Part shown: piece by piece, positions 12,755 through 63,950 of the stretch
Layout: the number at the start of each line of letters is the position of its first letter
Position numbering within the stretch: position 1 is the first letter of the stretch
Source of the DNA: Octopus sinensis
Taxonomy: Eukaryota
Assembly: GCF_006345805.1 (NCBI RefSeq)
Contig: NC_043013.1
Location: 6,324,001-6,388,000 of the forward strand
Length of the DNA stretch: 64,000 nt
Direction of reading: 5' to 3'
Position numbers and translations under genes: made by a program
Notes under the pieces: model-generated
What the model was told of the DNA's origin: nothing
The model's database searches: none
The model's input: the letters and a program-made list of their open reading frames with translations, nothing else

Positions 12755-14550
12755 CATCATCGTTTAACGTCCGTTGTCCATGCTGGCATGGGTTGGACGG
12801 TTTGATCAGAGCTGGTAAGCTGCATCAAACTCCAGTCTGATTTGGCATGGTTTCTAAGGCTGGATGCCATTCCTAATGCCAACCACTTTACCGCCACGAG
12901 TGCTTTTCACCACTAGATGAGCAGTCTTAACACTTCTGCTGCGGAGTACAGGTCTTCTTGAGTACAGCAAGGCGCCAGGCATTTCGATCCCCTGAAAGGT
13001 TCAGCGCCCTGAGGTCATTCTTCAGTACTTCCTCCGATGCCTTCCTGGGTCTGCAATTTCCACGTGTTCCATCTACTTTGAGAGATCGGTGCTTCTTTAT
13101 GGCATCCATCTGCATAACCTGACCAAACTAGCGTAGTCTTCTCTCTTGCACACTAATTCCTCTTATGCGTAACTTTTCTCTCAAAACACTAGTACTCTGT
13201 CGAACATGTACACTTACATTACACATCCAGCGGAGCATACCAGCCTCATTCCTTTCTAACCTTCGCATGTCCTCTGCATTTAGGGCCCACGTCTCACTAC
13301 CATGTAGAAGTGCTGTCCATACACATGCATCACACAATCTTCCTTTCACTCGGAAAGAGAAGCTTTTCGTGGCCAACAGAAGTAACAGCTCTGAATTTCC
13401 TTCATCCTATTCTTATTCTAGCTATCACACTCTCCGTGCATCCTCCCCCGCTACTAATTTGGTACCCTGGGTAGCAGAAATTATCGACTACCTCTAATGA
13501 GACCCCAGGGTATTTGAGAGAATCAATTTCCTGAGTCTCTAAAGTTTTTCTGGATCCTGTGCATTTCCACATACGAAAACCATCTTCTCTGATAACCTTC
13601 TTATTAATTGACCACACCTCTTGTGTGTCCATAGCTCACACTGGGTACACTGTATGAAGTCCCTGCCTACACCTTTCCTACAAATCAAATAGTACCACCT
13701 ATCTGAGTGGGGTAGGGTCCTGTCAGTTTTCTTGCTTACGAGGACCTTAGTTTTTGCTAAGTTAACCTTAAGGCCCTTAAATTCCAAGTTTTGCTTCCAC
13801 ACCTGGAATTTCTCGTCAGGCTCAGATATAGAATCCGCTATGAAGGTAAGATCATGAGCATATAGTAGCTCCCCAGGGCCCACCGGTCTTGAATTCTTCT
13901 GTTGTGGCCTGGCAGACAGTGATGAAAAGGAGGGGACTAAGGACTGAGTCTTGATGGACCCCTACCCTGTACACCAAACTCTTCACTGTACTCATAGTAA
14001 ACTCTCACCTTACTAACAGTGACTTTGTACATGGCCTGTACAGCTTTCACCAGCCACTCGTCAATCCCTAGCCCCCTCGGAGCCCACCATATCACACAGC
14101 GGGGCACTCTATCAGAGGCTTTTCCTAGATTAACGAATGTTATGTATAATGGTTTATTCTTAGCTAAGTACTTCTCTTGCGGTTACCTGACGATGAAATA
14201 GTGCCAGAAATGTTTTCCTTTTCCCTGGACGAAGCCGAACTGCATTTTGTCTCGCCTAATTCTTCTCCTAATTAATTGGACTAAAACTCTCTCCATTATT
14301 TCCATCACCTGGTCCAGGAGTTTGATGCCTCTATAATTGCTTCTATCTAAAGCATCACCCTTACTCTTGTAGCAGCTAACAATTATGTTACTACGCCAGT
14401 CATTGGGGACTACACCTTCCTGAATGACCGGATCATCTATGCGGGTGACTAACCCGTATCCTACTTCACTGGATACTTTGAGCATCTCGGCTGTGATTCC
14501 GGATGGACTAGGGGCTTTCTCGGTTTTCATGTTTTTAATTGCCTTATCTA
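12755..14550 (-). mobile_element. 5'-truncated, frameshifted RTE-clade LINE (RT domain, PHD-like insert, C-terminus, 3' UTR with (GAT)n tail)
   Basis: ORFs read KAPSPSGITAEMLK...NYRGIKLL...QFGFV, ELLYAHDL (YADD motif), and DACVWTALLHGSETW...RRLERNEAGMLRWMC. Confidence 0.9.
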
Positions 14551-27217: not shown

Positions 27218-27369
27218 TTAAAAAGTTGCATGAAATATATAATTAAAACTTAGAAATAAATATTCTTAAAATTCCGGGAGAGTGTCTATCTAAGGGAAAT
27301 AACCGGAGTGGCGCCCGGTGAAAGCGAGATAAGTCCTGGAAACTGACGGAGGAAAAATTATCTCCAAAC

Positions 27370-28848
27370 ATGAACCGAAATGATGGAAGCGAACTGGTTA
27401 TTGGTGATCGTATCGAATGTGATGATTATTTTGGGACGATAAAATATATAGGAGAAGTTGACGCGATGGAAGGTGTTTGGTTTGGCATTGATTGGGATGA
27501 AATTCATCGGGGAAAACATGACGGTAGCTATAAAGGTAGGCGTTACTTTCAAGCAGGACATCCTAAATCTGGTTCGTTTATTAAACCAATAAAGGCTAAA
27601 TTGGGACAATCTTTCCCTGAGGCTTACGTCTGTAAAGTTAAAGATGTTATTGATGTGCCTTCAAGAATTTTGATTCTCAATAATCATGCAATCTATGGAC
27701 TTGGTTCCCAGGAAGTGACCAGTCAGTTTTCGGCGATTGCGTCAAAAATAACAGAACTAGATCTTTCTGGTAATTTGTTGAAGAACTGGACTCAAGTTGC
27801 TGAAATTACTAACTTAATTCCTAATCTGTTGAAGTTAAATGTAAGTAATAACCGTTTAATAATTCCTGAACACGCGGAAAACTTGTCAAAATCTTTTGCC
27901 AAAGTAGAAGATCTGGTTTTAAACCGAATGAACTACGACTGGGCCAACATTTTATCTGCTGCGTCGATGTTTCCGTCCCTTCGAGGTTTGTACGTGTGTT
28001 TTAATAATTTGGAAAAATTGGATGATTCCACGGGGAAATTGACAAACCTGAAATTTCTCTCATTAATAGACAATCGCTTAAGTGACTGGAACGAACTTTT
28101 AAAACTTGGTCAACTTCCTCAATTGAGCACACTTTATGTAAGTAACAATCAACTGACAGCTGTCTCCTTCAATGACGTACCTTTGGAAGACGGCGAGAAA
28201 ACCACATATTTTCCTTCTCTGAAGTGTTTAGATTTAAGCAGCAACCTCATCGATAACCTGTCATCAATCGATGAGCTTAGTAAATTAGCCAACCTTGCCG
28301 AGTTTTCTTTCCTTCATAATCCAGCAGCAGATATAGATGAGGACAAACTATTTAATTTGATAATTGCCAAAATTGGCAGTTTAAAAAAATATTCAAAAGC
28401 CGAATTCCTTGTCGAAGAACGGAAAAGTGCTGAAATATTTTATCTTCGCATGGTTGAGAAACTGGCATTAGAGAAAAATATCAGTGAAGAAGACACAGCT
28501 AAAACATGTTCAAGATACAAAGAACTGGTAAAGTTGTATGGACATGCAAGTCCTGAATCATTAATAACCAAGACAACTGTTCTACGAGATAAATTAATTG
28601 CAGTTGACATTGAAACTGTTAATATTCCTGATAAAGTGTTCAAGAACAAGAAATTATCTCCAACCATGACCATTCTAAAACTGAAGTTACTTGTACAAAA
28701 ACTCTTTAAAATTCAAGAAATAACTAACCTAGAATTATCTTATATCAGTAAAAACAATTCTCAATTGAAAGTTCACTTAGAGAATGATTTGCATGAACTG
28801 TCGTTTTACAGTATAGAAAATGGTGATAATCTCGTTGCAAAATGGTAA
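27370..28848 (+). CDS. TBCE: Intronless TBCE-like protein (CAP-Gly, LRRs, UBL), 492 aa; copy A
   Basis: CAP-Gly motif GVWFGIDWD..RGKHDG, about 8 LRRs, EERKSAEIFY cap, and C-terminal UBL ending SFYSIENGDNLVAKW. ORF is intact; ATTAAA near 28934. Paralog rather than confirmed ortholog. Confidence 0.9.
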   Translation: MNRNDGSELVIGDRIECDDYFGTIKYIGEVDAMEGVWFGIDWDEIHRGKHDGSYKGRRYFQAGHPKSGSFIKPIKAKLGQSFPEAYVCKVKDVIDVPSRILILNNHAIYGLGSQEVTSQFSAIASKITELDLSGNLLKNWTQVAEITNLIPNLLKLNVSNNRLIIPEHAENLSKSFAKVEDLVLNRMNYDWANILSAASMFPSLRGLYVCFNNLEKLDDSTGKLTNLKFLSLIDNRLSDWNELLKLGQLPQLSTLYVSNNQLTAVSFNDVPLEDGEKTTYFPSLKCLDLSSNLIDNLSSIDELSKLANLAEFSFLHNPAADIDEDKLFNLIIAKIGSLKKYSKAEFLVEERKSAEIFYLRMVEKLALEKNISEEDTAKTCSRYKELVKLYGHASPESLITKTTVLRDKLIAVDIETVNIPDKVFKNKKLSPTMTILKLKLLVQKLFKIQEITNLELSYISKNNSQLKVHLENDLHELSFYSIENGDNLVAKW

Positions 28849-30059
28849 TTTATGCTTTACTTCATTCCTGTCTATGATAACTTTAAACCGGCAACTATTG
28901 TGTTTTGTAAAATATTTCCTGCATGAACTTTTATTAAAAGTGTGAGACACTTCAGTTTTTTTTCTTTTTTTTGTTTTAGTATTTTAGTTTTGTTTTCACC
29001 ATGAAAGCTAAGCTCATGCTGGAGTCCTTCTTTCAGAACTGTAATCATGTTTATGTTTGTCTCGCTCTCTCTGTACTTGACAACTAGTGTTGGTCTGTTT
29101 CCATACTTGTAACTTAGCGGTTCAGCAAAAAGTGCCCGATGTAATAAGTACTAGACTTAAAAATTCACACTGGGGTCGGTTTGATTGACTTAACCCTTTA
29201 TGATAGTACCCCTGCATGGCTGTAGATAATGACTGAAACAAGTAAAATGAACTCATTTCACGTTGCTCCAGCCTACTCAGCTGGTAAAAATGAGTAATCC
29301 TGCGATGGACCGGCGTCCCATCCAGGTGGGGAATTTCTACGCCACTGAAACTGGGAAACCAGCCCTTATGAGCCTGGCATGGCTCGAGAAGAAGGAAAGA
29401 TGCCCTTCCTGTCACCAGTCCTCACTTGTTTCCAAGCTAAGTAATATTTTACAGTTGTCAGACATGTTTTGATACAAGATTGGAAATGAGAGTTGTAAAC
29501 AAGCATCACTGTCATACAAGCAGTGTTGCTCATTCCCTGTCTTTCATGAAAAAAAACCCAGAAATATTTGCACATGCGGAAATATTACTTTGCTTGGAAA
29601 CATGTATGGGTTGGTGATAAGGTGGACATCTCGTGACGAGAAATTCTTATTATTTGAAAGGGGACAAGCTGGCAGAGTCATTAACATGCCAGACAAAATG
29701 CTTAGAAGCATTCCATCTGTCTTTAGGTTCAAATGCTACCAAGGTTGATTTTATCTTTCATCCTTTTGGGAGATGAGGAAGCATGAAATAAATACCAGTT
29801 GAGCATGAGTGTTGATGTAATTGACTAACTCCTTCTACAAGAAATTTCGGGACTTATGCTTGTAGAAGTACGGATTATTTGAGAGAGAAGTGGTTTACAG
29901 AATCAGTGGAGTATTAGACAAAATGTCTTGTAATTAAATACTTTACATCTGATTTCAAAACCCACCAAACTGAAGTTGATCTTTAATCCATGCAGTTAAT
30001 AAAATATACACCAATCATGTAACAGATACTATTTAACCCTTTCGTTACCATTCACTGCC

Positions 30060-38285: not shown

Positions 38286-38473
38286 AAATTAATTTAGAGC
38301 ATGTAAAAAAATATTTCTTTATTATTAAAATATATGAGCAAATGATATGAAATTTATATAAAGCATATATCAACTACAGTTTTATATATATAGATATTAT
38401 TTCCTCAATTTTATGAAAGCAGAATAATTGCCTGTTTAACGTTATCATAGACAGGAATGTATTAAAGCCAGAA

Positions 38474-41218
38474 TTACCACTTTGCAATTAAACTATCGCC
38501 ATTTTCTATGCTGTAATGAGACAGTGGCTTAAAATCATCGTCTAATTCAACTTTTACTTCAGGATTTTCTCTGCTGATATAAGATAGTTTTAGATTAGTC
38601 ATTTCCTGAATTTTAAAGAGTTTTTGTACAAGTGACTTCAGTTTTAGAATGGTTATGTCTGGAGACAATTTCTTGTTCTTCAATACTTTATCAGGAATAT
38701 TATCAGTTTGGATATCAACAGCAATTAATTTATCTCGTAGCAGAATTGTTTTAGTTATCAATGATTGTGGACTCGCATGTCCATATTTCTTCACCAGTTC
38801 TTTGTACCTTGAACAGGTTTTAGCTGTGTCTTCTTCACCAATATTTTTTTCTAATGCCTCCCTCTCAACCATATCTAGATAATATACTTCAGCATTTTTC
38901 CTTTCTTCATCACGAATAAGGGTTTTATCATATTTTTTTAAACTGCCAATTTTACCAACGGTAATATAAAATAGTTTGTCCTTATATACAGCTCCCAATG
39001 GGTTATTTGCTAAAATAAGCTCAGTCAGGTTGGCCAGTTTGCTAAGCTCATCGATTGATGACCGGTTATTGATGTCATTCTTGTTTAAACTTAGACATTC
39101 AAGAGAACGAAAATGTGATGTTTTCTTGCCATCTTCCAAAGATACGTCATTAAAAGAGACGGATGTCAATTGATTGTTATTTACGTAAAGTGTGCTCAAC
39201 TGAGGAAGCTGACCAAATTTTAAAAGTTCATTTTCATCACTAATACGATTGTTTGACAATGAGAGGAATTTTAGCTTTGTCAATTTTCCTGTGGAATCAA
39301 TAAATGTTTCCAAATTATTGAAACTTGCATACAAACGTTGAAGTGATGGAAACATTGATGTAACAGATAAAATGTTAGCCCAGTTATAGTCCATCCTGTT
39401 CAGAATAAGTTCTTCTACATTTGTAAAAGATTTTGCAAACATTTCTACATTTTCAGGAATTATCAAACGGTTACTACTTACATTTAATAGTATTAGATTA
39501 GGAATAATGTTAGCAATTTCCACAACTTGAGTCCAACTCTTCAACAGGTTAGTAGAAAGATCTAGTTCTGTTAATTTTGAGGCAATTGACAAAAACTGAC
39601 TGGTCACTTCCTGGGAACCAAGACCATAAATTCCATAATTATTGAGAATCAGAATTCTTGGAGGCATAATTAAAACATCTTTAGCTTTACAGGCATAAGC
39701 ATCAGGAAAAGACTGTCCGAGGTTAATGTGAAGTGGGTTAATAAAGGAACCAGATTTAGGATGGCTTGCTTGATAATAACACCTACCTTTATAGCTACCG
39801 TCATGTTTTCCCCGATGAATTTCATCCCAGTCAATGCCAAACCAAATACCTTCCATTGTGTCAACTTCTCCTATATATTTTATCGTCCCAAAACAATTCT
39901 CACTTTCAATACGATCACCAATAACCAGTTTGCTTCCATCATTTCGGTTCATATCTGGAAATAATTTCTTGTTTCTGATCATTTCTTCTGGAATATCACC
40001 ATCTGTTAAATGACTTTGGAGGGAATGCTTTTCAGGATATTCATAACCATATTTCTGTCCTAGTTCTTTGTACCTTGAACACGTTTTAGTTAAGTCTTCT
40101 TCACTGATATTTTTCTCTAATGCCTGTTTCTCAATCATGCGAAGATAAAATATTTCAGCATCTTTCTGTTTTTCATCATGGATAATAGTTTTTGCATACT
40201 TTTTTAAACTGCCAATTTTGGCAATTATCAAATTAAACAGTTTGTCCTCATCTATATCTGCTGTTGGATTATGAAGGAAAGAAAACTCGGTAAGGTTGGC
40301 TAATTTACTAAGCTCATCAATTGATGACAGGTTATCGATGAGGTTGCTGCTTAAATCTAAACACTTTAGAGAAGGAAAATATGTGGTTTTCTCACCGTCT
40401 TCCAAAGGTACGTCATTGAAGGAGACGGCTGTCAGTTGATTGTTATTTACATAAAGTGTGCTCAATTGAGGAAGTTGACCAAGTTTTAAAAGTTCGTTCC
40501 AGTCACTTAAGCGATTGTCTATTAATGAGAGAAATTTCAGGTTTGTCAATTTCCCCGTGGAATCAGCCAATTTTTCCAAATTATTAAAACACACGTACAA
40601 ACCTTGAAGGGACGGAAACATCGACGTAGCAGATAAAATGTCGGCCCAGTCGTAGTTCATTCGGTTTAAAACCAGATCTTCTACTTTGGCAAAAGATTTT
40701 GACAAGTTTTCCGCGTGTTCAGGAATTATTAAACGGTTATTACTTACATTTAACTTCAACAGATTAGGAATTAAGTTAGTAATTTCAGCAACTTGAGTCC
40801 AGTTCTTCAACAAATTACCAGAAAGATCTAATTCTGTTATTTTTGAGGCAGTCGCCGAAAACTGACTGGTCACTTCCTGGGAACCAAGACCATAGATTAC
40901 ATAATTATCGAGAATCAAAATTCTTGAGCGCACATCTACGATATCGCCATGTTTACAGACGTAAGCGTCAGGGAAAGATTGTCCCAATTTAGCCTTTATT
41001 GGTTTAATAAACGAACCAGATTTAGGATGTCCTGCTTGAAAGTAACGCCTACCTTTATAGCTACCGTCATGTTTTCCCCGATGAATTTCATCCCAATCAA
41101 TGCCAAACCAAATACCTTCCATTGCTTCAACTTCTCCTATAAATTTTATCGTCCCAAAATAATCATCACATTCGATACGATCACCAATAACCAGTTCGCT
41201 TCCGTCTTTTCTCTTCAT
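38474..41218 (-). CDS. TBCE: Intronless double TBCE-like protein, 914 aa: [CAP-Gly-LRR-truncated UBL] fused to [CAP-Gly-LRR-UBL]; copies B1 and B2
   Basis: Two GKHDG CAP-Gly domains and two LRR arrays in one uninterrupted frame; single complete UBL at the C-terminus. Paralog rather than confirmed ortholog. Confidence 0.9.
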   Translation of the reverse strand: MKRKDGSELVIGDRIECDDYFGTIKFIGEVEAMEGIWFGIDWDEIHRGKHDGSYKGRRYFQAGHPKSGSFIKPIKAKLGQSFPDAYVCKHGDIVDVRSRILILDNYVIYGLGSQEVTSQFSATASKITELDLSGNLLKNWTQVAEITNLIPNLLKLNVSNNRLIIPEHAENLSKSFAKVEDLVLNRMNYDWADILSATSMFPSLQGLYVCFNNLEKLADSTGKLTNLKFLSLIDNRLSDWNELLKLGQLPQLSTLYVNNNQLTAVSFNDVPLEDGEKTTYFPSLKCLDLSSNLIDNLSSIDELSKLANLTEFSFLHNPTADIDEDKLFNLIIAKIGSLKKYAKTIIHDEKQKDAEIFYLRMIEKQALEKNISEEDLTKTCSRYKELGQKYGYEYPEKHSLQSHLTDGDIPEEMIRNKKLFPDMNRNDGSKLVIGDRIESENCFGTIKYIGEVDTMEGIWFGIDWDEIHRGKHDGSYKGRCYYQASHPKSGSFINPLHINLGQSFPDAYACKAKDVLIMPPRILILNNYGIYGLGSQEVTSQFLSIASKLTELDLSTNLLKSWTQVVEIANIIPNLILLNVSSNRLIIPENVEMFAKSFTNVEELILNRMDYNWANILSVTSMFPSLQRLYASFNNLETFIDSTGKLTKLKFLSLSNNRISDENELLKFGQLPQLSTLYVNNNQLTSVSFNDVSLEDGKKTSHFRSLECLSLNKNDINNRSSIDELSKLANLTELILANNPLGAVYKDKLFYITVGKIGSLKKYDKTLIRDEERKNAEVYYLDMVEREALEKNIGEEDTAKTCSRYKELVKKYGHASPQSLITKTILLRDKLIAVDIQTDNIPDKVLKNKKLSPDITILKLKSLVQKLFKIQEMTNLKLSYISRENPEVKVELDDDFKPLSHYSIENGDSLIAKW

Positions 41219-41299
41219 GTTTGGAGATAGTTTTTCCTCCGTCAGTTTCTAAGAAATTATCTCGCTTCCACTGGAAACTATGAGAGTGATTTCCCTTAG

Positions 41300-41600
41300 A
41301 TAAACACTCTTTTTTCCCCCTCTTTTGTTTGTTCTTTTTATATATAAAAGATAAAAAGAAACAAGTTTTGTAACGAAGGGGGGGGGGGAGAAAACGTGGA
41401 GTGTCACGTGGGGAAGGCGGTGGCAAACCCGCGGGAATAAAACTGATTTACTATGGTAGCTGGTTATTTTTTTTCTCTCTTTTACCAACTTTTCTGGAAG
41501 TTTGTCCTCTTCAAGTCAACCCCTAGCGGCACCTCGCACCCGAAAAATTCGGCGCAAACAATGTCGTTATGTAATTGATACCTGATGACGTAAACTATCA
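41300..41600 (-). promoter_or_regulatory. Candidate promoter of the fused TBCE-like gene
   Basis: TATAAAA (41342-41336, minus strand) lies ~32 nt upstream of where leader homology with copy A begins. GTCACGTG E-box at 41403-41410, TGACGTAA CRE-like site near 41586, and locally CpG-rich sequence. Confidence 0.45.
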
Positions 41601-41884: not shown

Positions 41885-43380
41885 ACACACTTATTCTTTT
41901 ACTTGTTTCTGTCGTTTTGATTGTGGCCATGCTGGAGCACCGCCTTTAGTCGAACAAATCGCCCCCCTGGATTTAGTCTTTGTAAGCCTGGTACTTATTC
42001 TATCGGACGCTTTTGCCGAACCACTAGCTTATGGGGACGTAAGCACACCAAGATCGATTTTTCAAGCGATGGGGTGCGCGCGCGCGTGTGTGTGTGTGTG
42101 TTCAATTACATCAAGGATATAAAATCGAATACAGGTAAAAAAAAACCCGATAGAATAAGTACTAGGCTCACAAAGAATAAGTCCTGGGGTCGATTTGCTC
42201 GACTAAAGGCGGTGCTCCAGCATGGCCACAGTCAAATGACTGAAACAAGTAAAAGTAAGTATTTATATATAATCTTTCAAGTAGGATTTAATGAGGCTGC
42301 GCTGTAAGAAGTTCATTTCCCATCCATATAGTTTTGGACAAATGTCTTCTATTATAGCCCTGGGTTGATCAAAGGTTTGAGACTGGTAGCCGTTGTGTGT
42401 GCGTGTGTATAGGGGGGGGGTGTTACTGTCTTCTTGCCTTGACATTGTGTGACAGTTGTAAACAAGTGTCATTCTCATGCAAGCTGTGTCCTTTGATTTC
42501 AGTCTGGCCATGGGAAACCTCATTTGGGAAAAAATGAGAGTTGGCCACAGGGAGGACGGTAGAAAAATCTGCTTCACCAAATTCTGTCAAACTCATGTAA
42601 GCAGCTGGGAAAAGGGAACATTAAAATGATGGTGATGATGATGACGACGGCGACGACGCTAATGATGGTGATGATGATGATGATGACGACGGCGACGACG
42701 CTAATGATGGTGATGATGATATTTCGCTGCTAAAATAGGTCATGAGAATTTTATTGAACATGGCCTTCACATTTATCTTAAACGTGTATAAATTTTGAGA
42801 TTAGATTAGGCCGTCCATATTTCTCTGATAACTCAGTAGATTTTTTTCATTTGAATAACATTCGCCGCGTGTTATTAATTTTATTGTTGATATATAAATA
42901 AAAGCCCCTCTTATCGAAGTTGAAACTGATAACAGAATTGCGAGGACTGTTCCACTGTGACATAAACTTATTTATATGAGAAATTAACAATGTTGAATTA
43001 ACATTCAATAAAATGCAAATTTATACTTTTGTTACGTTTTTACTATTATACCCATCATAAGTAAGTTGGAAAAATTCTTAGCATGCTAGACAAAATGTCT
43101 AGCAGCATTTCATCCATCTCTACATTCTGAATTTAAATTCCACTTATGAGAGCGGTTGGGTTTGTTTTCAGTAATCTCGCTTGTGTGAGCAGACGAGTTT
43201 ATTTCAGATATTCTCATTTTAAAAATCATCTCTGACTAATTGTTGAGAGGATGTTGGTGTTGCCTTGGCGGAAGTTTGCGCTCTCTGAGTGCTCTTGTTA
43301 TTATTATTTTTACAATTATTATTATTATTATTACAATTATTATTATTATTATTACAATTATTATTATTATTATTATTATT

Positions 43381-43590: not shown

Positions 43591-43652
43591 ATATTATTAT
43601 TATTATTTTTACAATTATTATTATTATTATTATTATTACAATTAATATTATC

Positions 43653-43852
43653 ATTTCCTCAATTTTATGAAAGCAGAATAATTACCTGTTTAAAGTTATC
43701 ATAGACAGGAATGTATTAAAGCCAGAATTACCATTTTGCAATTAAACTATCGCCATTTTCTAAGCTGTAATGAGACAGTGGCTTTAAATCATCGTCTAAT
43801 TCAACTTTTACTTCAGGATTTTCTCTACTGATATAAGATAGTTTTAAGATTA
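43653..43852 (-). pseudogene. 3' remnant of a further TBCE-like copy (last ~40 codons plus 3' UTR)
   Basis: About 95% identical by eye to 38397-38600; encodes KLSYISRENPEVKVELDDDLKPLSHYSLENGDSLIAKW*. Confidence 0.9.
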
Positions 43853-46624: not shown

Positions 46625-48504
46625 CTAGCAGCATAGCCCGGCGTTGCCCGGGTATGTAAGAGCCCCTAGTAGGCAACGACTAATCCCAATCTAGTCCTTT
46701 CCCTCTAGGGAACGAAGGCGCATGTGTAGGTTGCAATGTCTTCTCTTCACTCCCAAATAACTATCAAACAGCTATCGATAATTCAACCCAACCAATTCCT
46801 ACCAGAAAGAAATTACATTCGAGACTTTACCCCCAACACCGCCACTTCTGCTAATAGCTGCTGCAGCCGCAAGTTATTCGAATACTTTTTTTGTTTACAC
46901 TTTCTTTATAACTACCACCCCAAACGTTTTACCTTAAATTTTTGACGTACCCTAAGGGTCCTCGGACGCTACTTGCAAACTCTTGGTTTATTATAAACCG
47001 CTTTTGCCGTGTGCACCAAAAAACCTTTTCCATTCGTTTGTTCAGTTTGGTCACTTTTGACTTTTTCGTTGTTGTCACTCACATTGCTGCCCGCTTTTTT
47101 TGCTGTTTTTGTACATTTTTATACATTTTGGGATACTTACCCCACGTGTTCCGAGAGTTAAAAAGGTCGAGTTGCGTCCCCTAGACAGTCTGTGGTTTGT
47201 GTTTAATACACAAAATCGGTTTGCTATGTGTGCCACATATAATAATAATGAAATTAATTGTATACAGTGCTCAGGTGCACCACAACTTGTCAGAAAGTGC
47301 ATATAAAGTACATGCAGTAATGTAGAAATGTCTGGAAAGCGAACAATGTATGAGTCAGATACATGCTTGCGTGTGTATGGAGGGGAGAAAATCAGGTGTA
47401 GTGTTGGCGAATCTCAGGAAGCATGGAAGTTTTGAAGGATGCAGTGCTCCGACAACTAACAACTGATGCCGGCAGTTTGTTCCATGCTTCAGCAACTCTC
47501 AGCGTGAAAAAATGTTTCCTGAAGTCATGGGAGCTGTGCTGTTTTCTTACTTTGTAAATATGTCCACGGGTGTTAGATGGGTGGAGTTTGAAAAGGTGCT
47601 CAGAGTTATTGTTTGTACGATGGTGATAATTTTATGGGTGTCTGCCAAGTCAGCTGCCAGACGTCGGAGTTTCAATGTGTCCATGCCCAGGGAAGTAAGG
47701 CGTTCAGGATATGGCAAATGCCTGATGGAGGGTATTCTTTTGGTTGCACGTCGCTGAACAGCTTCCAGACGATTGATATCCTGGGCAAGATAGGGATTCC
47801 AGACCGGTGATGCAAATTCCAGGTGAGGTCTTACTATAGCTATATAAAGCCGCAGATAGATAGCCGGAGAGCGGCTCACAAAGGATTTGGTGAGTGATGC
47901 CAAGACACCCTCAGCCTTCTTGACAATTTTAGCGATGTGTTTTGTCCAACGCAAATCACTGTCGACAATAACACCCAGGTCACGTTCAACCGATTTTTTC
48001 CAGTAATAAAGTATCCTATTGGAATAAAAAGGGCCATATAGCTCCTTGGAGCAGATACGATGCTCGTTGTGAATTTAAAAAAAAATTCCTGCCAATTTGT
48101 GAAAGATATTGTCGAAAATACGTCATCTTGAATTTGAACGCGATTTCCCAAAATGGCATGATTTTATCGATTTTTTCTGATGGTAAGGTATTGCATGGAA
48201 AACTAACGTCAGAATTAAGTTTCTTAGGGTAACATTAAGCTTCACCATGAGTTTGGTGAAAATCGATTGCAAGTTGCGAAAACTACAACAGAAAATGTGT
48301 TGCATATAAAAAGCTTAGATTCTCGACCCCATGTCGAATTTATCGATTTTTTTTCAGAACTGGGGGAACTTTTCAAAATTTTCGCTGCGTTAGTTTTGAA
48401 TTATGACATTGGGCTATGTGTGTGTCAAGTTTCATCAGAATCGGTTGAAAGCTGTGGTCAGGGTGAGGGTACAACCTGACAGACACACAGACAGACAAAC
48501 TGCC

Positions 48505-50013: not shown

Positions 50014-51654
50014 CTCGCTTGTTGCTCAATGGGGTTTAAAATTTAAATTTACCAAATGTTTTTGCTCGTTAAATCTCAACAATGGACCACCGCATCATCA
50101 TTGCATGAAATATGCTGAAGGGGAAGGAATATTGGAAAATATCAAGGCATGTCATAGTGACAAAAAAACAAAGCAAAAAACATTGAAGGCACCAGGTGGT
50201 CGTGGGATGTACTAGAAACAACAGCTAAATCTCCCTTAAATCACACACGTTTTCGTCTGAAAATCACGTTTAAATTATAAACAGATACAAATTGCAGATT
50301 CGGATTGTCTGTATTTTAAAATTATGATTTTAAAAAATTTCGAAAAATGTCGAAATTTTAGGATTTATGGGTTGTGATGGGGTGGGAAGCTGGGGGTTAA
50401 TGAAAAAATTTAAATGGTCTTGGTGGTCTGAATCGTTTAGCTAAAGTATGAAAACCAGCAATCTCAGGCCCAAATAGTCTACTTGCTTTACGTTGAAGGT
50501 CTGGTCCCTAATTCCACTCAACAAGGTCATTCTAAAAGTAAACAATCACATCATGAAACCCATGAAACTGAGTGACCATGGGATTGCACCTAGAAAGTTA
50601 CCTTCCAAGCCACAAGTCCAGATATGGTTATTTATGGAAGACCAGCAGTCTCCCATGCATGCCAGCCGCCCCTCTCCCCGCCACTGATGTTATCCAAGGA
50701 AAAGGCAAAGGGGCCGATACAGCTTGGCACCTGTGACGTCGCAACTCATTTCTACAGCTGAGTGAACTGGAGCAACGTGAAATAAAGTGTCTTGCTCAAG
50801 AACACAGCACACAGCCCGGTCTGAGAATCGAACTAATTACCTCATGATTGTGAGTCCGATGCTCTAACCACTGAGCAAGAAAAAAAAAAAACCAAAGTCG
50901 GTGTTTGAAGACTTCACAAAATTTTGAATTTTTTTTTCTTTTCAATATAAAAATAGGCGTGTCACATAGTTTCTAGGTGCGCAAATTGGACAAAATCGGT
51001 CTAGAAAGGTAAGTTTGTACGTTGACTGCTGATTTCACTAAATGAAATTGGTAATAAATTAAGTTCTGTGTGTGTTTTCAACTAATTTAACATCCGTAAA
51101 GCTTTGTTATGGATTTCTTTTGTCCGGAAGCGGTGGTGTGGAATGGGACGGATAAATTACCTTTACAATTTGAAGTTCGTAAGTGTGGAAGTTGTAAAGG
51201 TAATTTATGGACAGCTTTCTGTCTAGTCAGTTGGAAAAGAAAGCTAAAAGAAATTGAATTTAGTTTATCAGTTTCACACACACACACACACACACACGCA
51301 CGCACACACACACACACACACACACACAGTCACACACACACACACACACACGCACGCACACACACGCACGCACGCACACACACACACACAAATAAGAAAT
51401 TAAATATTAAACTCATTTCTTTTATTTCCTTTTCCAAGAATAACATATTTTACAGATTTCATAAAGAAACATGCGCGCACGCACAGACATTCACCCACCC
51501 CCGCACACGCACGCACACACACACACACACACGCACGCACACACACGCACGCACACACACACGCACACACACACACACACATGCATGTTAATACATAGGA
51601 GTTAATAAATATGTTTGCGTATGTATGAGTTACACACACATATCAAAAGAATAA

Positions 51655-54213: not shown

Positions 54214-54519
54214 TGTACACACACGTATATATATATATATACGTATACTCACATAAATATTTATATACATATCCACACACACACATACACACACACACAC
54301 ACACACGCATACACACACATGTCATGTGTATGTTAATAAGTGAAATGATATATTTAATTAATTCATTAATAGTTTGGTGTCATTAACTACCGCCTATCTA
54401 TTATTCATTTATTTATTTATTTTTGAACTTTCATTAGATCTGTTCCGCACTGGGTTTTCGGAATCTGGTCCTGAATTGTATGTCTCTGTTATACAATTTA
54501 TGTATGTATTCCTATACAT

Positions 54520-54997
54520 TGTATGTATGTATGTATGCATGCATGTATGTATGTATGTATGTATGTATGTATGTATGTATGTATGTATGTATGTATGTAT
54601 GTATGTATGTATGTATGTATGTATGTATGTCATTATTCAGTTTTATTTCAATATTTCTTGCGAGAGAGTGAGAGAGAGAGAGAGCCGGTTTCTAACCTAG
54701 ATCCAAGATTCCTTCATTGGAAGTTCAACATCAACAACAATGTATTTTTGTATGTATGTATATGTGTAGATTTATGTTTTACTTTATGTATGTATGTATG
54801 TATGTATTATGCATGTATGTATGTATGTATGTATGTATGTATGTATGTATGTATGTATGTATGTATGTATGTATGTATGCATGCATGTATGTATGTATGT
54901 ATGTATGTATGTATGTATGTATGTATGTGTATGTATGTATGTATGTATGTATGTATGTATGCATGCATGTATGTATGTATGTATGCATGTATGTATG

Positions 54998-55028
<31 letters not shown>

Positions 55029-55700
55029 GTATGTATGCATGTATGTATGTATGTATGTGTATGTATGTATGTATGTATGTATGTATGCATGCATGTATGT
55101 ATGTATGCATGTATGTATGTATGTATGTATGTATGTATGTATGCATGTATGCATGTATGTATGTATGTATGTATGTATGCATGTATGCATGTATGTATGT
55201 ATGTATGTGTATGTATGTATGTATGTATGTATGTATGCATGTATGTATGTATGTATATATGTATGCATGTATGTATGTATATATGTATGCATGTATGTAT
55301 GTCATTATTCAGTTTTATTTCAATATTTCTTGCGAGAGAGAGAGACAGAGAGAGAGAGCCGGTTTCTAACCTAGATCCAAGATTCCTTCATTGGAAGTTC
55401 AACATCAACAACAATGTATTTTTGTATGTATATGTGTAGATTTATGTTTTACTTTATGTATGTATGTATGTATGTATGTATGTATGTATGTATGTATGTA
55501 TGTATGCATGCATGTATGTATGTATGTAAGTATGTATGTATGTATGTATATATGTATGTATGTATGTACGTATGTATGTATGTATGTATGTATGCATGCA
55601 CGTATGTATGTATGTATGTATGTATGTATGTAGTATGTATGTATGTATGTATGTATGTATGTATGCATGCACGTATGATTGCATGTATGTATGTATGCGC
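54520..55700. repeat. (ATGT)n arrays with a duplicated ~165-bp unique unit
   Basis: 54626-54790 and 55298-55460 are near-identical and separated by (ATGT)n. Confidence 0.9.
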
Positions 55701-56355
55701 GTACATAGATACATGTATGTATCTATATTCCAGGTACGACTTTAAACTGCATCCGGGTTCTGATTCGGGTGTTCCGGGGTTTTGAGGAGTGTGGTCCCAT
55801 CCCTTAGCTACTATTGTTACCAGGTTTACTCTGATCTCGAATAGTAGCATTTGTCATGGTGCCAGCTATGGGCTAATCAGCATATTAGGGCATGTCTATT
55901 TAGGCATGTGAAGACAGCAGTTTAGACATGTGTGACATCAGTTTGCATTGTCCAGATGCTGTAGCCAGGCCGAAATAATGTCTTCACCATTTGACCCTTC
56001 TAACCTCTCCTAGACCACCAAAAGCAAGAATTAAAATAACAAGACCACCAACGAAATCCATTGTTCTCAACGATATGTCTATCCTTCTGGATAGTTATAA
56101 AAACAAGAACCTCCAAGCAAAAATCAGTTAGTCACTGGGTGACAACTCAGTTAGTGAGAACGGAGTCTAGCTGACAGACTGGACAAAACGCCGTCTCTAA
56201 AGAAAAGGGCACAAAAATGACAACAATGGTAACTCACCAACGAAGCAATTGCTTCGTCCCACATTCTCTCACTCTCACTAGCTCATTTTAATTTTTCTCA
56301 CAACATCACTCTATCTCCATCTGTAATTACTACTACGCAATGACGAGGACATAAG

Positions 56356-63319: not shown

Positions 63320-63950
63320 GCATACATACATATACATACATACATACATACATTACATACATACAGCACTTGGCATACATGCATACATGCATGCATACAT
63401 ACATACCTACCATAACATTACATACATACATACATTTACATCATAACATACATACATACATACATCATACATACATAACATACATACCTACTACATACAT
63501 ACATACAGTACCACATACATACATACATACATAACATACATACATACACATACAATACATACATAACATTTTACATACATGCATACATAATACATACATA
63601 CATAACATACATACATCCATTACATACATACAGCAATACATACATACATACATACATGCATACACGCATGCATGCATTACACGCATGCATGCATACACAC
63701 ATGAATGCATACATTACATGCATACATACATACATACATATATTACATACATGCATACACATTATACAAATACATACATGCATACATAACATACATACAT
63801 GCATTACACACATGCATGCATACATTTTACATGCATGCATACATACATACAATACATACATACATACATACATACATACATACATACATACATACATACA
63901 TACACACATGCATGCATGCATACATGCATACATACATAATACTTACATAA
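63320..63950. repeat. Degenerate (ACAT)n microsatellite
   Basis: Directly visible tetranucleotide array. Confidence 0.95.

What the first reader, a model, noticed from the sequence alone, without database searches (positions are those of the whole stretch)
38474..41218. Intact in-frame fusion of two diverged TBCE-like units (double CAP-Gly/LRR protein)
Seen: one 914-codon ORF with two CAP-Gly+LRR units that differ at roughly a quarter of residues by eye, with no stop or frameshift and only one complete UBL. Known: TBCE is normally a single CAP-Gly-LRR-UBL protein that binds alpha-tubulin with TBCD and Arl2. Inference: a bivalent tubulin-binding protein kept open by selection, possibly a lineage-specific microtubule regulator or tubulin-sequestering factor.
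Basis: partly seen in the sequence, partly recalled or inferred. Interest (0 to 1): 0.8.

Follow-up and report, generated by a model that had tools for sequence, protein, structure and literature searches.

The report
Conserved double-unit tubulin chaperone E gene
Octopuses carry an intact, intron-free gene in which two copies of the tubulin-folding cofactor TBCE are fused head to tail into one 914-residue protein. Selection has kept it for at least about 34 million years, but nobody has tested what it does.

Summary
Window 38474-41218 (-) is one 914-codon ORF made of a first TBCE unit without its ubiquitin-like domain (B1, aa 1-422) fused in frame to a complete 492-aa TBCE unit (B2, aa 423-914).

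It is not an assembly artefact. The same 914-codon ORF, with an identical junction, is present in Octopus vulgaris and O. bimaculoides and is already annotated there as "tubulin-specific chaperone E(-like)".

Both halves are under purifying selection. Orthologous dN/dS is 0.24 for B1 and 0.33 for B2, and the 2745-nt ORF has no indel, whereas the flanks show about one gap per 77 nt.

A single-unit, intronless paralogue (A, 27370-28848 +) lies 9.6 kb away and repeatedly gene-converts B1.

The fusion point sits on a short homology between the 5' leader/start codon and an internal site of the ubiquitin-like domain (TCTCCAANCATGA). This explains how an in-frame fusion arose.

No other cephalopod TBCE was found, and gastropod TBCE is multi-exon. 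The octopus genes therefore look like retrogene-derived TBCEs.

The protein most likely has one TBCD-docking domain and two alpha-tubulin-binding arms, but this function is inferred, not shown. I could check no transcript or protein evidence.

The parts
38474..41218 (-). Gene B: 914-codon intronless ORF plus stop, the double-unit TBCE
   Evidence: Identical length in O. vulgaris and O. bimaculoides.
39953..41218 (-). Unit B1 (aa 1-422): CAP-Gly, LRR and three-helix bundle; ubiquitin-like domain truncated
   Evidence: Alignment with A and B2. Orthologous dN/dS 0.24.
40997..41188 (-). CAP-Gly domain 1 (aa 11-74)
   Evidence: Pfam PF01302 best stretch 11-74. GKHDG and the W/G core are intact.
40259..40921 (-). 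LRR solenoid 1 (about aa 100-320)
   Evidence: Pfam LRR families. AlphaFold2 strand/helix repeats, pLDDT 75-94. Homogenised with A by gene conversion.
40049..40249 (-). Three-helix bundle 1 (about aa 324-390)
   Evidence: AF2 helices 324-335, 348-368 and 373-390. The domain is named in PMC12881605.
39953..40048 (-). Inter-unit linker (aa 391-422): degenerate remnant of the start of B1's UBL, carrying a 10-codon deletion
   Evidence: Alignments. AF2 pLDDT 31-49 over aa 396-420.
39938..39976 (-). Fusion junction (codons 415-427, AACAAGAAATTATTTCCAGATATGAACCGAAATGAT). Met423 is the former start codon of B2.
   Evidence: Identical in three species. Lies on the leader/UBL short homology.
38474..39952 (-). 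Unit B2 (aa 423-914 plus stop): complete 492-aa TBCE unit
   Evidence: Orthologous dN/dS 0.33. All 36 non-octopus TBCEs in alignment A1 align to this half.
39731..39922 (-). CAP-Gly domain 2 (aa 433-496)
   Evidence: Second PF01302 stretch. AF2 pLDDT 84-94. Conserved core retained.
39014..39661 (-). LRR solenoid 2 (about aa 520-735)
   Evidence: Pfam LRR_4 best stretch 647-689. AF2 pLDDT 80-97.
38783..39001 (-). Three-helix bundle 2 (about aa 740-812)
   Evidence: AF2 helices 740-756, 770-790 and 795-812.
38480..38725 (-). The only ubiquitin-like domain (aa 832-913)
   Evidence: Pfam Ubiquitin_2 832-907. PDB TBCE UBL structures 1wjn and 4icu match 830-914. dN/dS 0.26.
41219..41310 (-). About 91-nt leader upstream of B1, shared with A (likely 5' UTR); ends in TCTCCAAACATGA
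   Evidence: blastn A vs B; sequence view; motif search.
38408..38473 (-). About 65-nt trailer after the stop of B2, shared with A (likely 3' UTR)
27279..28913 (+). Paralogue A: single-unit intronless TBCE (CDS 27370-28848, 492 aa) with the shared leader and trailer. Convergent with B and the gene-conversion partner of B1.
27361..27373 (+). Short-homology site 1 in A: leader/start codon, TCTCCAAACATGA
   Evidence: 3 matches in the window, 0.02 expected by chance
28657..28669 (+). Short-homology site 2 in A: inside the UBL (SPTM), TCTCCAACCATGA. This is the position at which B1 is cut.
43594..43852 (-). Young partial copy of the 3' end of B2 (last ~39 codons plus trailer), 2.4 kb upstream of B1
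   Evidence: Present in O. vulgaris, absent at the orthologous place in O. bimaculoides.

Best explanation
Gene B is a real octopus protein-coding gene kept by selection. It encodes a TBCE paralogue made of two TBCE units in one polypeptide: [CAP-Gly - LRR - three-helix bundle] - about 25-residue flexible linker - [CAP-Gly - LRR - three-helix bundle - ubiquitin-like domain].

SHOWN:
- The architecture.
- Its conservation, with an identical junction, in three Octopus species.
- Purifying selection on both halves, including the parts of B1 that paralogue A does not overwrite.
- The CDS has no introns.
- Recurrent gene conversion between A and B1.
- A short homology (TCTCCAA-N-CATGA, longer in two species) between the leader/start codon and an internal Met codon of the UBL, exactly where the fusion lies.

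INFERRED (origin):
- An intronless, retrogene-type TBCE was duplicated.
- Two head-to-tail copies, or two mRNA templates during reverse transcription, were then joined at that short homology.
- This removed the end of copy 1's UBL, any spacer, and copy 2's leader, and kept the reading frame because ATG was aligned on ATG.

INFERRED (function), from published TBC-DEG structures:
- In those structures the TBCE ubiquitin-like domain docks on the TBCD spiral. The LRR-CAP-Gly arm holds alpha-tubulin and its C-terminal tail.
- B can therefore dock once on TBCD through B2's UBL while presenting two alpha-tubulin-binding arms.
- The extra arm, B1, cannot dock on TBCD by itself. It most likely captures a second alpha-tubulin or a tubulin tail on a neighbouring dimer or the microtubule lattice.
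- That would change avidity or stoichiometry rather than chemistry.
- A, the single complete unit that keeps most of the conserved TBCE residues, most likely does the ordinary TBCE job.
For: - ORF and domains. AF2 model with two confident CAP-Gly/LRR/3HB sets, one UBL and a low-confidence linker at aa 396-420.
- Same 914-aa protein in O. vulgaris (CAI9735554.1) and O. bimaculoides (XP_014777048.1), each encoded by one uninterrupted 2745-nt stretch. Ungapped orthologue alignment and identical junction DNA.
- Species split of about 34 My.
- dN/dS, window species vs O. bimaculoides: A 0.35, B1 0.24, B2 0.33, all p < 1e-5. Parts of B1 not homogenised with A: 0.25, p = 2e-4.
- Collinear non-coding blocks show 50 gap openings in about 3.9 kb, against 0 in the 2745-nt CDS.
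- CAP-Gly core residues, including GKHDG, are retained in both units. Of 87 columns conserved in 40 other TBCEs, A keeps 67, B2 keeps 63 and B1 keeps 57; 6 of B1's 30 losses are alignment gaps in the region it lacks.
- Best solved relative is human TBCE, 9m1k_E, E = 3e-72.
- Short homology at the junction. The motif occurs 3 times in the window (A start, A UBL site, B1 start), with 0.02 expected.
- Domain roles in TBC-DEG: PMC12881605 and PMC13155304.
- Gastropod TBCE is multi-exon, 538 aa spread over 14.1 kb.
- Closest non-octopus relatives of A are only 40-42% identical, and every one I could name is a non-cephalopod.
Against: - I could check no transcript, 5'-end or peptide evidence. The existing gene models may rest on ab initio prediction or protein alignment, and no independently assembled transcript-like contig carrying the protein is in the protein collection.
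- Selection was measured on effectively two independent lineages with a simple counting method.
- Gene conversion from the constrained paralogue A overwrites much of B1. This could help keep B1 open without selection on B1 itself, although the unconverted parts still show dN/dS of 0.25.
- B2 has changes at a few otherwise conserved CAP-Gly positions: F60Y, R72N, K75H/N, and R47W in O. vulgaris.
- Binding to tubulin or TBCD is untested.
- pTM of 0.50 gives no information on how the two units sit relative to each other.
- No poly(A) remnant or target-site duplication supports retroposition.
Confidence: 0.6

Rival explanations
1. Only B2 matters. B1 is a functionally inert N-terminal extension or leader. 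It stays open because a stop would abolish translation of B2, and because gene conversion from A keeps repairing it. The protein then works as an ordinary one-armed TBCE.
For: B1 lacks the TBCD-docking UBL. A overwrites the LRR of B1: 1-2% difference within a species against 6-8% between species. The linker is predicted to be disordered.
Against: Selection against stops alone does not lower dN/dS. B1 has the lowest value of the three units at 0.24, and 0.25 (p = 2e-4) in the parts A does not convert. The CAP-Gly core residues of B1 are all retained.
Confidence: 0.2
2. B1 and B2 are expressed as two separate products from the one locus: an internal promoter or start gives B2 alone, and premature polyadenylation gives B1 alone. 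In that case the long ORF is not the functional unit.
For: Met423 is the ancestral start codon with a purine at -3. No transcript data were available here.
Against: No stop codon separates the units in any of three species, and the junction DNA is identical over 36 nt. B2's own leader was deleted by the fusion, so no ancestral promoter-proximal sequence is left. Scanning ribosomes would meet many upstream AUGs.
Confidence: 0.1
3. Assembly artefact or decaying processed pseudogene: a collapsed or chimeric tandem duplicate, or a dead retrocopy whose frame is open by chance.
For: The sequence is intronless, sits in a repeat-rich region, and has rearranged flanks: a partial 3' copy at 43594-43852 and a missing 1.2-1.7 kb downstream.
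Against: Three independent chromosome-scale assemblies of three species carry the same ORF and junction. dN/dS is far below 1. There are no indels over 2745 nt, where about 36 would be expected at the flank rate.
Confidence: 0.02

Closest known systems
Tubulin-specific chaperone E (TBCE; yeast Pac2), a subunit of the TBCD-TBCE-Arl2 (TBC-DEG) tubulin chaperone
   Same: Each unit has the TBCE order CAP-Gly, LRR, three-helix bundle, and B2 adds the C-terminal ubiquitin-like domain. All best database and PDB matches are TBCE. The CAP-Gly GKHDG core is conserved.
   Different: There are two units in one chain, and the first lacks the UBL. The CDS is intronless, whereas a gastropod TBCE spans 14.1 kb. 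Each unit is about 40 residues shorter than usual. Identity to other animals' TBCE is only 31-42%, and 20-30 of the 87 conserved positions are changed or missing in each unit. Among about 400 relatives fetched, none has the double architecture apart from one partial fish model.
TBCEL / E-like (LRR plus UBL, no CAP-Gly), a TBCE paralogue of vertebrates reported to destabilise microtubules (from my own knowledge, not checked here)
   Same: It is a precedent for a TBCE-derived paralogue with changed domain content taking on a regulatory rather than a folding role.
   Different: E-like lost the CAP-Gly and kept the UBL. B1 did the opposite, and it is not a separate protein.
Tandem CAP-Gly proteins such as CLIP-170/CLIP-115 (Restin)
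   Same: They have two CAP-Gly domains in one chain. In CLIPs this gives avidity for tubulin and EB C-terminal tails. Their CAP-Gly domains match both B units.
   Different: In B the CAP-Gly domains are about 420 residues apart, each with its own LRR arm. B has no coiled coil or zinc knuckles and descends from TBCE, not from CLIPs.
Fused or chimeric duplicate genes, and retrogenes that replace their intron-bearing parent (general class, from my own knowledge)
   Same: The copies are intronless while relatives have introns. The in-frame junction lies at a short homology, as expected for microhomology-mediated deletion between tandem copies or for template switching by a reverse transcriptase.
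   Different: No poly(A) tail, target-site duplication or parental gene could be found. The RNA-based origin is therefore inferred only from the lack of introns.

Membership tests
TBCE (tubulin-specific chaperone E) | N-terminal CAP-Gly domain with the GK(N/H)DG tail-binding motif | tested here: met
   PF01302 E = 1.4e-40 with two stretches. GKHDG and the invariant W/G/D residues are present in B1 and B2 in all three species.
TBCE (tubulin-specific chaperone E) | Central leucine-rich-repeat arm followed by a helical (three-helix) bundle | tested here: met
   LRR_4, LRR_8 and LRR_9 hits in both halves. The AF2 model shows two LRR solenoids, each followed by three helices, at pLDDT 66-97.
TBCE (tubulin-specific chaperone E) | C-terminal ubiquitin-like domain (the TBCD-docking domain) | tested here: met
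   Met once, at aa 832-913 (Pfam Ubiquitin_2; PDB 1wjn and 4icu). Not met for unit B1, which stops about 15 residues into the UBL.
TBCE (tubulin-specific chaperone E) | Closest relatives across eukaryotes are TBCE proteins | tested here: met
   Nearly all named hits are TBCE or TBCE-like. Human TBCE 9m1k_E matches at E = 3e-72.
TBCE (tubulin-specific chaperone E) | Binds alpha-tubulin and assembles with TBCD and Arl2 | not testable with these tools
   Needs biochemistry. Only the roles of the homologous domains are known, from PMC12881605 and PMC13155304.
Processed retrogene | Intronless coding sequence where orthologues elsewhere have introns | tested here: met
   A and B are single uninterrupted ORFs in three species. 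Babylonia TBCE has 538 aa spread over 14.1 kb.
Processed retrogene | Poly(A) remnant and target-site duplications at the ends of the copy | tested here: not met
   None is recognisable after the shared ~65-nt trailer or around the ~91-nt leader. At this age they may have decayed.
Processed retrogene | An intron-bearing parental gene elsewhere in the genome | tested here: inconclusive
   No other cephalopod TBCE appeared in the exhaustive search with A (best non-octopus 40-42%) or among the 120 best relatives of a gastropod TBCE. Only 20 of the 150 listed hits could be named, and unannotated genes cannot be seen.
CLIP-type tandem CAP-Gly microtubule plus-end proteins | Adjacent CAP-Gly domains followed by a long coiled coil and C-terminal zinc knuckles / EEY tail | tested here: not met
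   Only the CAP-Gly domains match. The Pfam scan shows no coiled-coil or zinc-knuckle domain. It is not a member; any resemblance is functional only.

The most novel reading that the evidence does not exclude
Octopuses no longer have a conventional intron-bearing TBCE. The essential cofactor has been replaced by fast-evolving retrogene copies. One of them, the fused gene B, is a new kind of tubulin cofactor. It docks once on TBCD but carries two alpha-tubulin-binding arms. It therefore either loads or holds two alpha-tubulins per chaperone cycle, or tethers the TBC-DEG machine to the microtubule lattice. This would be a lineage-specific change in how the soluble tubulin pool is managed in an animal with very large, microtubule-rich neurons.
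Probability: 0.15. Interest if true: 0.75.

Novelty: new variant of a known kind. Interest (0 to 1): 0.5.

Why it matters
TBCE is a universally conserved, essential, normally single-copy cofactor. Its three parts have clear separate roles in the recently solved TBC-DEG structures.

A naturally occurring version with two alpha-tubulin-binding arms and one TBCD anchor, kept by selection, is a ready-made experiment on stoichiometry and avidity in tubulin biogenesis and recycling.

If the octopus genes are the only TBCEs in these genomes, this is also a clear case of an essential housekeeping gene replaced by retrocopies that then duplicated, fused and kept exchanging sequence.

The fusion junction is a textbook-quality example of how a short homology that happens to align ATG with ATG can create an in-frame gene fusion.

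No paper in the searched library mentions it, although the proteins are in public databases under a generic name.

Tried and rejected
- **Assembly artefact:** rejected, because three assemblies of three species agree.
- **Pseudogene:** rejected on dN/dS and the absence of indels.
- **Retrocopy hallmarks:** I looked for poly(A) tails and target-site duplications at the ends of A and B and found none.
- **The 3' fragment at 43594-43852:** I first read it as a relic of an older tandem copy, or as a 5'-truncated retrocopy with an A-rich tail. It is 96% identical to the end of B2. Flanking DNA that lies just 3' of B2 in the other two species has a copy about 250 nt from it. It is also absent at the orthologous place in O. 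bimaculoides. It is therefore a young DNA-level partial duplication.
- **Star-like origin of A, B1 and B2:** raw nucleotide distances in codons 346-395 suggested that all three arose at once, which would have favoured a one-step template switch. Synonymous distances do not support this (A/B1 0.27-0.44, against 0.57-0.79 to B2), so the order of events stays open.
- **A conventional cephalopod TBCE:**
  - The search with B, the exhaustive search with A and the search with a gastropod TBCE found none.
  - Naming 20 of the best hits also found none.
  - Two unnamed candidates come from metagenome assemblies of unknown organisms. P0176 is an unrelated frameshifted intronless copy. P0008 could not be assigned.
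- **Other double TBCEs:** among about 400 relatives fetched, I found only one partial fish model.
- **Literature:** searches for TBCE with octopus or cephalopod found nothing relevant.
- **Structure prediction:** all outside homologues aligned to B2, so B1 was modelled from three sequences only. pTM of 0.50 says nothing about contacts between the units.
Full report
**1. The observation**

- Window 38474..41218 (-) is a single ATG-to-stop ORF of 914 codons.
- Pfam finds two CAP-Gly stretches, LRR families in both halves, and one ubiquitin-like hit at aa 832-907.
- Splitting at the internal MNRNDGS gives B1 (aa 1-422) and B2 (aa 423-914, 492 aa).
- The window also holds a single-unit copy, A, at 27370..28848 (+). 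It is 492 aa, convergent with B and 9.6 kb away.
- Identities are A/B1 86%, A/B2 73% and B1/B2 68%. The two units of B therefore differ at about a third of residues, not a quarter.
- B1 follows the TBCE plan up to the first ~15 residues of the ubiquitin-like domain (UBL). It then runs straight into the start Met of B2, in the peptide ...NKKLFPD|MNRNDGSK....
- A and B are the only long real ORFs in a repeat-rich window of 33-45% G+C.

**2. It is real and conserved**

- The exact window proteins are in the public collection. They cluster with Octopus vulgaris CAI9735554.1 (914 aa) and CAI9735553.1 (492 aa), and with O. bimaculoides XP_014777048.1 (914 aa) and XP_014777020.1 (492 aa). All are named "tubulin-specific chaperone E(-like)".
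- In both other genomes the 914-aa protein is encoded by one uninterrupted 2745-nt stretch. A lies nearby in convergent orientation.
- The orthologues align without a single gap. The 36 nt around the junction are identical in all three species.
- The window differs from O. vulgaris by dS of about 0.036. It is therefore a very close relative, probably O. sinensis; that is my inference.
- A published estimate puts the O. bimaculoides split at about 34 My and the O. sinensis/O. vulgaris split at about 2.5 My.

**3. Selection**

| Unit | dN/dS, window species vs O. bimaculoides | Synonymous / non-synonymous changes |
|---|---|---|
| A | 0.35 | 39 / 54 |
| B1 | 0.24 | 39 / 39 |
| B2 | 0.33 | 42 / 55 |

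- These are Nei-Gojobori counts. Each unit departs from neutrality at p < 1e-5.
- Collinear non-coding blocks between the two species carry 50 gap openings in about 3.9 kb, roughly one per 77 nt. The 2745-nt CDS carries none, where about 36 would be expected.
- A caveat came out of the data: A and B1 exchange sequence.
  - In LRR codons 121-300 they differ by 1-2% within a species but 6-8% between species.
  - O. vulgaris B1 codons 1-60 have recently been overwritten by A, at 0.6% difference.
- Conversion from a constrained donor could therefore prop up B1. However, the parts of B1 that stay distinct from A (residues 61-120 and 301-422) still give dN/dS of 0.25, p = 2e-4.
- B2 is not converted and is constrained on its own, including its UBL at 0.26. 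The UBL of A gives 0.93, but from only 14 changes.

**4. Anatomy**

An AlphaFold2 model (mean pLDDT 82, pTM 0.50) gives these segments:

| Segment | Residues |
|---|---|
| CAP-Gly 1 | 1-88 |
| LRR 1 | about 100-320 |
| Three helices 1 | 324-390 |
| Low-confidence stretch (pLDDT 31-49) | 396-420 |
| CAP-Gly 2 | 423-510 |
| LRR 2 | 520-735 |
| Three helices 2 | 740-812 |
| UBL | 832-913 |

- All 36 outside homologues aligned to B2. B1 was therefore modelled from three sequences.
- Nothing can be said about contacts between the units.
- Of 87 columns at least 90% conserved in 40 non-octopus TBCEs, A keeps 67, B2 keeps 63 and B1 keeps 57. Six of B1's 30 losses are alignment gaps in the region it lacks.
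- The CAP-Gly core (G, W, D, GKHDG, YF, GSF) is kept in both units of B. The exceptions are in B2: F60Y, R72N and K75H/N.
- The octopus family as a whole is divergent. It is 31-42% identical to other animals' TBCE, with a deletion between the CAP-Gly and the LRR.

**5. How the fusion arose**

- The 15-20 nt before and including the start codon of A and B1 read AAA(T/C)TATCTCCAAACATGAAC.
- The UBL of A reads AAATTATCTCCAACCATGACC at exactly the position where B1 is cut (SPTM).
- The junction in B reads AAATTATTTCCAGATATGAACCG.
- The core TCTCCAANCATGA occurs three times in the 64-kb window: at the start of A, at the UBL site of A, and at the start of B1. By chance 0.02 matches are expected.
- Joining at this short homology aligns the UBL's internal ATG with the start ATG, which is why the frame is preserved.
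- Two routes give this product:
  - microhomology-mediated deletion between two head-to-tail DNA copies;
  - a reverse transcriptase switching from the leader of one TBCE mRNA to the UBL site of another.
- The data do not separate the two routes.
- The detectable shared unit is about 91 nt of leader, the CDS, and about 65 nt of trailer. This is mRNA-sized, but at this divergence neutral flanks would have faded anyway.
- After the fusion, the B1 tail lost 10 codons and diverged into the linker.
- Synonymous distances place B2 as the most distant unit: 0.45-0.8, against 0.04-0.44 for A/B1. Because of conversion, the order of events cannot be fixed.

**6. Are these the octopus TBCEs?**

- The coding sequences have no introns. 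A gastropod TBCE of 538 aa spans 14.1 kb.
- An exhaustive HMMER search with A against 1.84 billion representatives finds the O. bimaculoides A at 90%, and then nothing above 42%.
- The hits I could name were a gastropod, an annelid, insects, a mite, echinoderms, a hemichordate, a coral, shrimp, a priapulid, horseshoe crabs, nematodes, a sponge and a tuatara. None was a cephalopod.
- The 120 best relatives of the gastropod TBCE include gastropods, bivalves, nemerteans, a brachiopod, an annelid and vertebrates, but again no cephalopod.
- The annotated proteomes of three Octopus species therefore seem to hold no conventional TBCE. This points to a retrogene that replaced its parent.
- That is not proven. 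Only 20 of the 150 listed hits could be named, unannotated genes are invisible to these tools, and no poly(A) remnant or target-site duplication survives.

**7. Likely mechanism (inferred)**

- In the yeast and human TBC-DEG structures, the TBCE ubiquitin-like domain is anchored on the TBCD spiral.
- The three-helix bundle acts as a hinge.
- Applied to B: the protein has one TBCD anchor and two alpha-tubulin arms. The second arm (B1) hangs from the N-terminus of B2's CAP-Gly on a flexible ~25-residue tether.
- I consider it most likely that B still enters a TBCD/Arl2 complex through B2. B1 would then add a second alpha-tubulin or tail-binding site. It could queue a second alpha-tubulin, or bind a neighbouring dimer or the lattice. 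A would perform the standard job.
- The main rival is that B1 is a passive extension. Its low dN/dS argues against this but does not exclude it.

**8. Comparison and novelty**

- B passes every sequence-level test for TBCE membership, but with the unit doubled and one UBL lost.
- It is not a CLIP-type tandem CAP-Gly protein and not an E-like protein.
- Among about 400 TBCE relatives fetched, only a partial fish gene model shows any doubling.
- No paper in the searched library links TBCE with octopus or cephalopods in this sense.
- The proteins are already in GenBank and RefSeq under a generic name. The sequence is therefore not new, but the architecture, its origin and its conservation appear undescribed.
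- I rate it a new variant of a known kind, of moderate interest. The structural and evolutionary case is solid. The functional case is open and directly testable.

**9. What could not be done**

- No RNA or proteome data and no other cephalopod genomes are reachable with these tools.
- Expression across the junction, the phylogenetic age of the fusion, and the absence of a parental gene therefore remain to be tested.

Noticed in passing
window 43594-43852 (-) and 43144-43344: A young partial copy of the last ~39 codons of B2 plus its trailer lies 2.4 kb upstream of B1 and is followed by an (AAT)n-rich stretch. About 250 nt away is a copy of sequence that lies just 3' of B2 in the other two species. 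The partial copy is about 96% identical to the end of B2. It is present in O. vulgaris (L002 7399-7602) but absent at the orthologous place in O. bimaculoides.
   Followed up: partly
window about 38373-38395, compared with L001 12824-14039 and L002 12848-14574: Directly 3' of B2 the window lacks about 1.2-1.7 kb that both O. bimaculoides and O. vulgaris have. The missing piece includes the segment whose paralogous copy sits at window 43144-43344.
   Followed up: partly
window 27370-28848 (+) versus 39953-41218 (-); L001, L002, L003: There is mosaic, recurrent gene conversion between the inverted paralogues A and B1. LRR codons 121-300 are 1-2% different within a species and 6-8% between species. 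In O. vulgaris alone, B1 codons 1-60 were recently overwritten by A (0.6% difference). B2 is untouched.
   Followed up: yes
window 28585-28845 (UBL of A, codons 406-492): The ubiquitin-like domain of the single-unit paralogue A shows dN/dS of about 0.93 between the window species and O. bimaculoides (3 synonymous, 11 non-synonymous changes). The UBL of B2 gives 0.26. The numbers are small, but the asymmetry is odd if A is the ordinary TBCE.
   Followed up: partly
L002 (O. vulgaris) B2, unit residue 47; window B2, unit residues 57-60: O. vulgaris B2 has Trp at a CAP-Gly arginine that is invariant in 40 other TBCEs. The window's B2 has Cys at unit residue 58, where every other octopus unit has Arg. 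Both O. vulgaris and the window have Tyr at unit residue 60, a Phe that is invariant in the 40 other TBCEs. These may be polymorphisms, sequencing errors or early relaxation.
   Followed up: no
L005 9983-11536 (ENA ERZ26859052, contig ctg304613): An unrelated intronless TBCE copy with two frameshifts sits on a metagenome-derived contig of an unknown animal. It is closest to a bivalve TBCE at 45% and is probably a processed pseudogene. This shows that TBCE mRNA is retroposed elsewhere too.
   Followed up: partly
protein P0332 (Coryphaenoides rupestris, 670 aa, partial): This is the only other TBCE relative among about 400 with a repeated N-terminal part (residues 5-210 and 244-657 both match A from residue 10). 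It looks like a gene-model or assembly artefact in a draft fish genome.
   Followed up: no
window 13539-14530 (-) and 47547-47954 (-): Short ORFs look like remnants of a non-LTR retrotransposon. Only 13539-13883 gives weak, sub-threshold Pfam hits (RVT_1 E = 0.0025, PHD E = 8e-5). The others gave none.
   Followed up: partly
window 51100-51600 and 54370-55850; also 63570-63930: Long (CA/TG)n and ATGT/ACAT-type microsatellite arrays produce spurious ORFs of 100-283 aa on both strands, along with a strong local GC skew.
   Followed up: no
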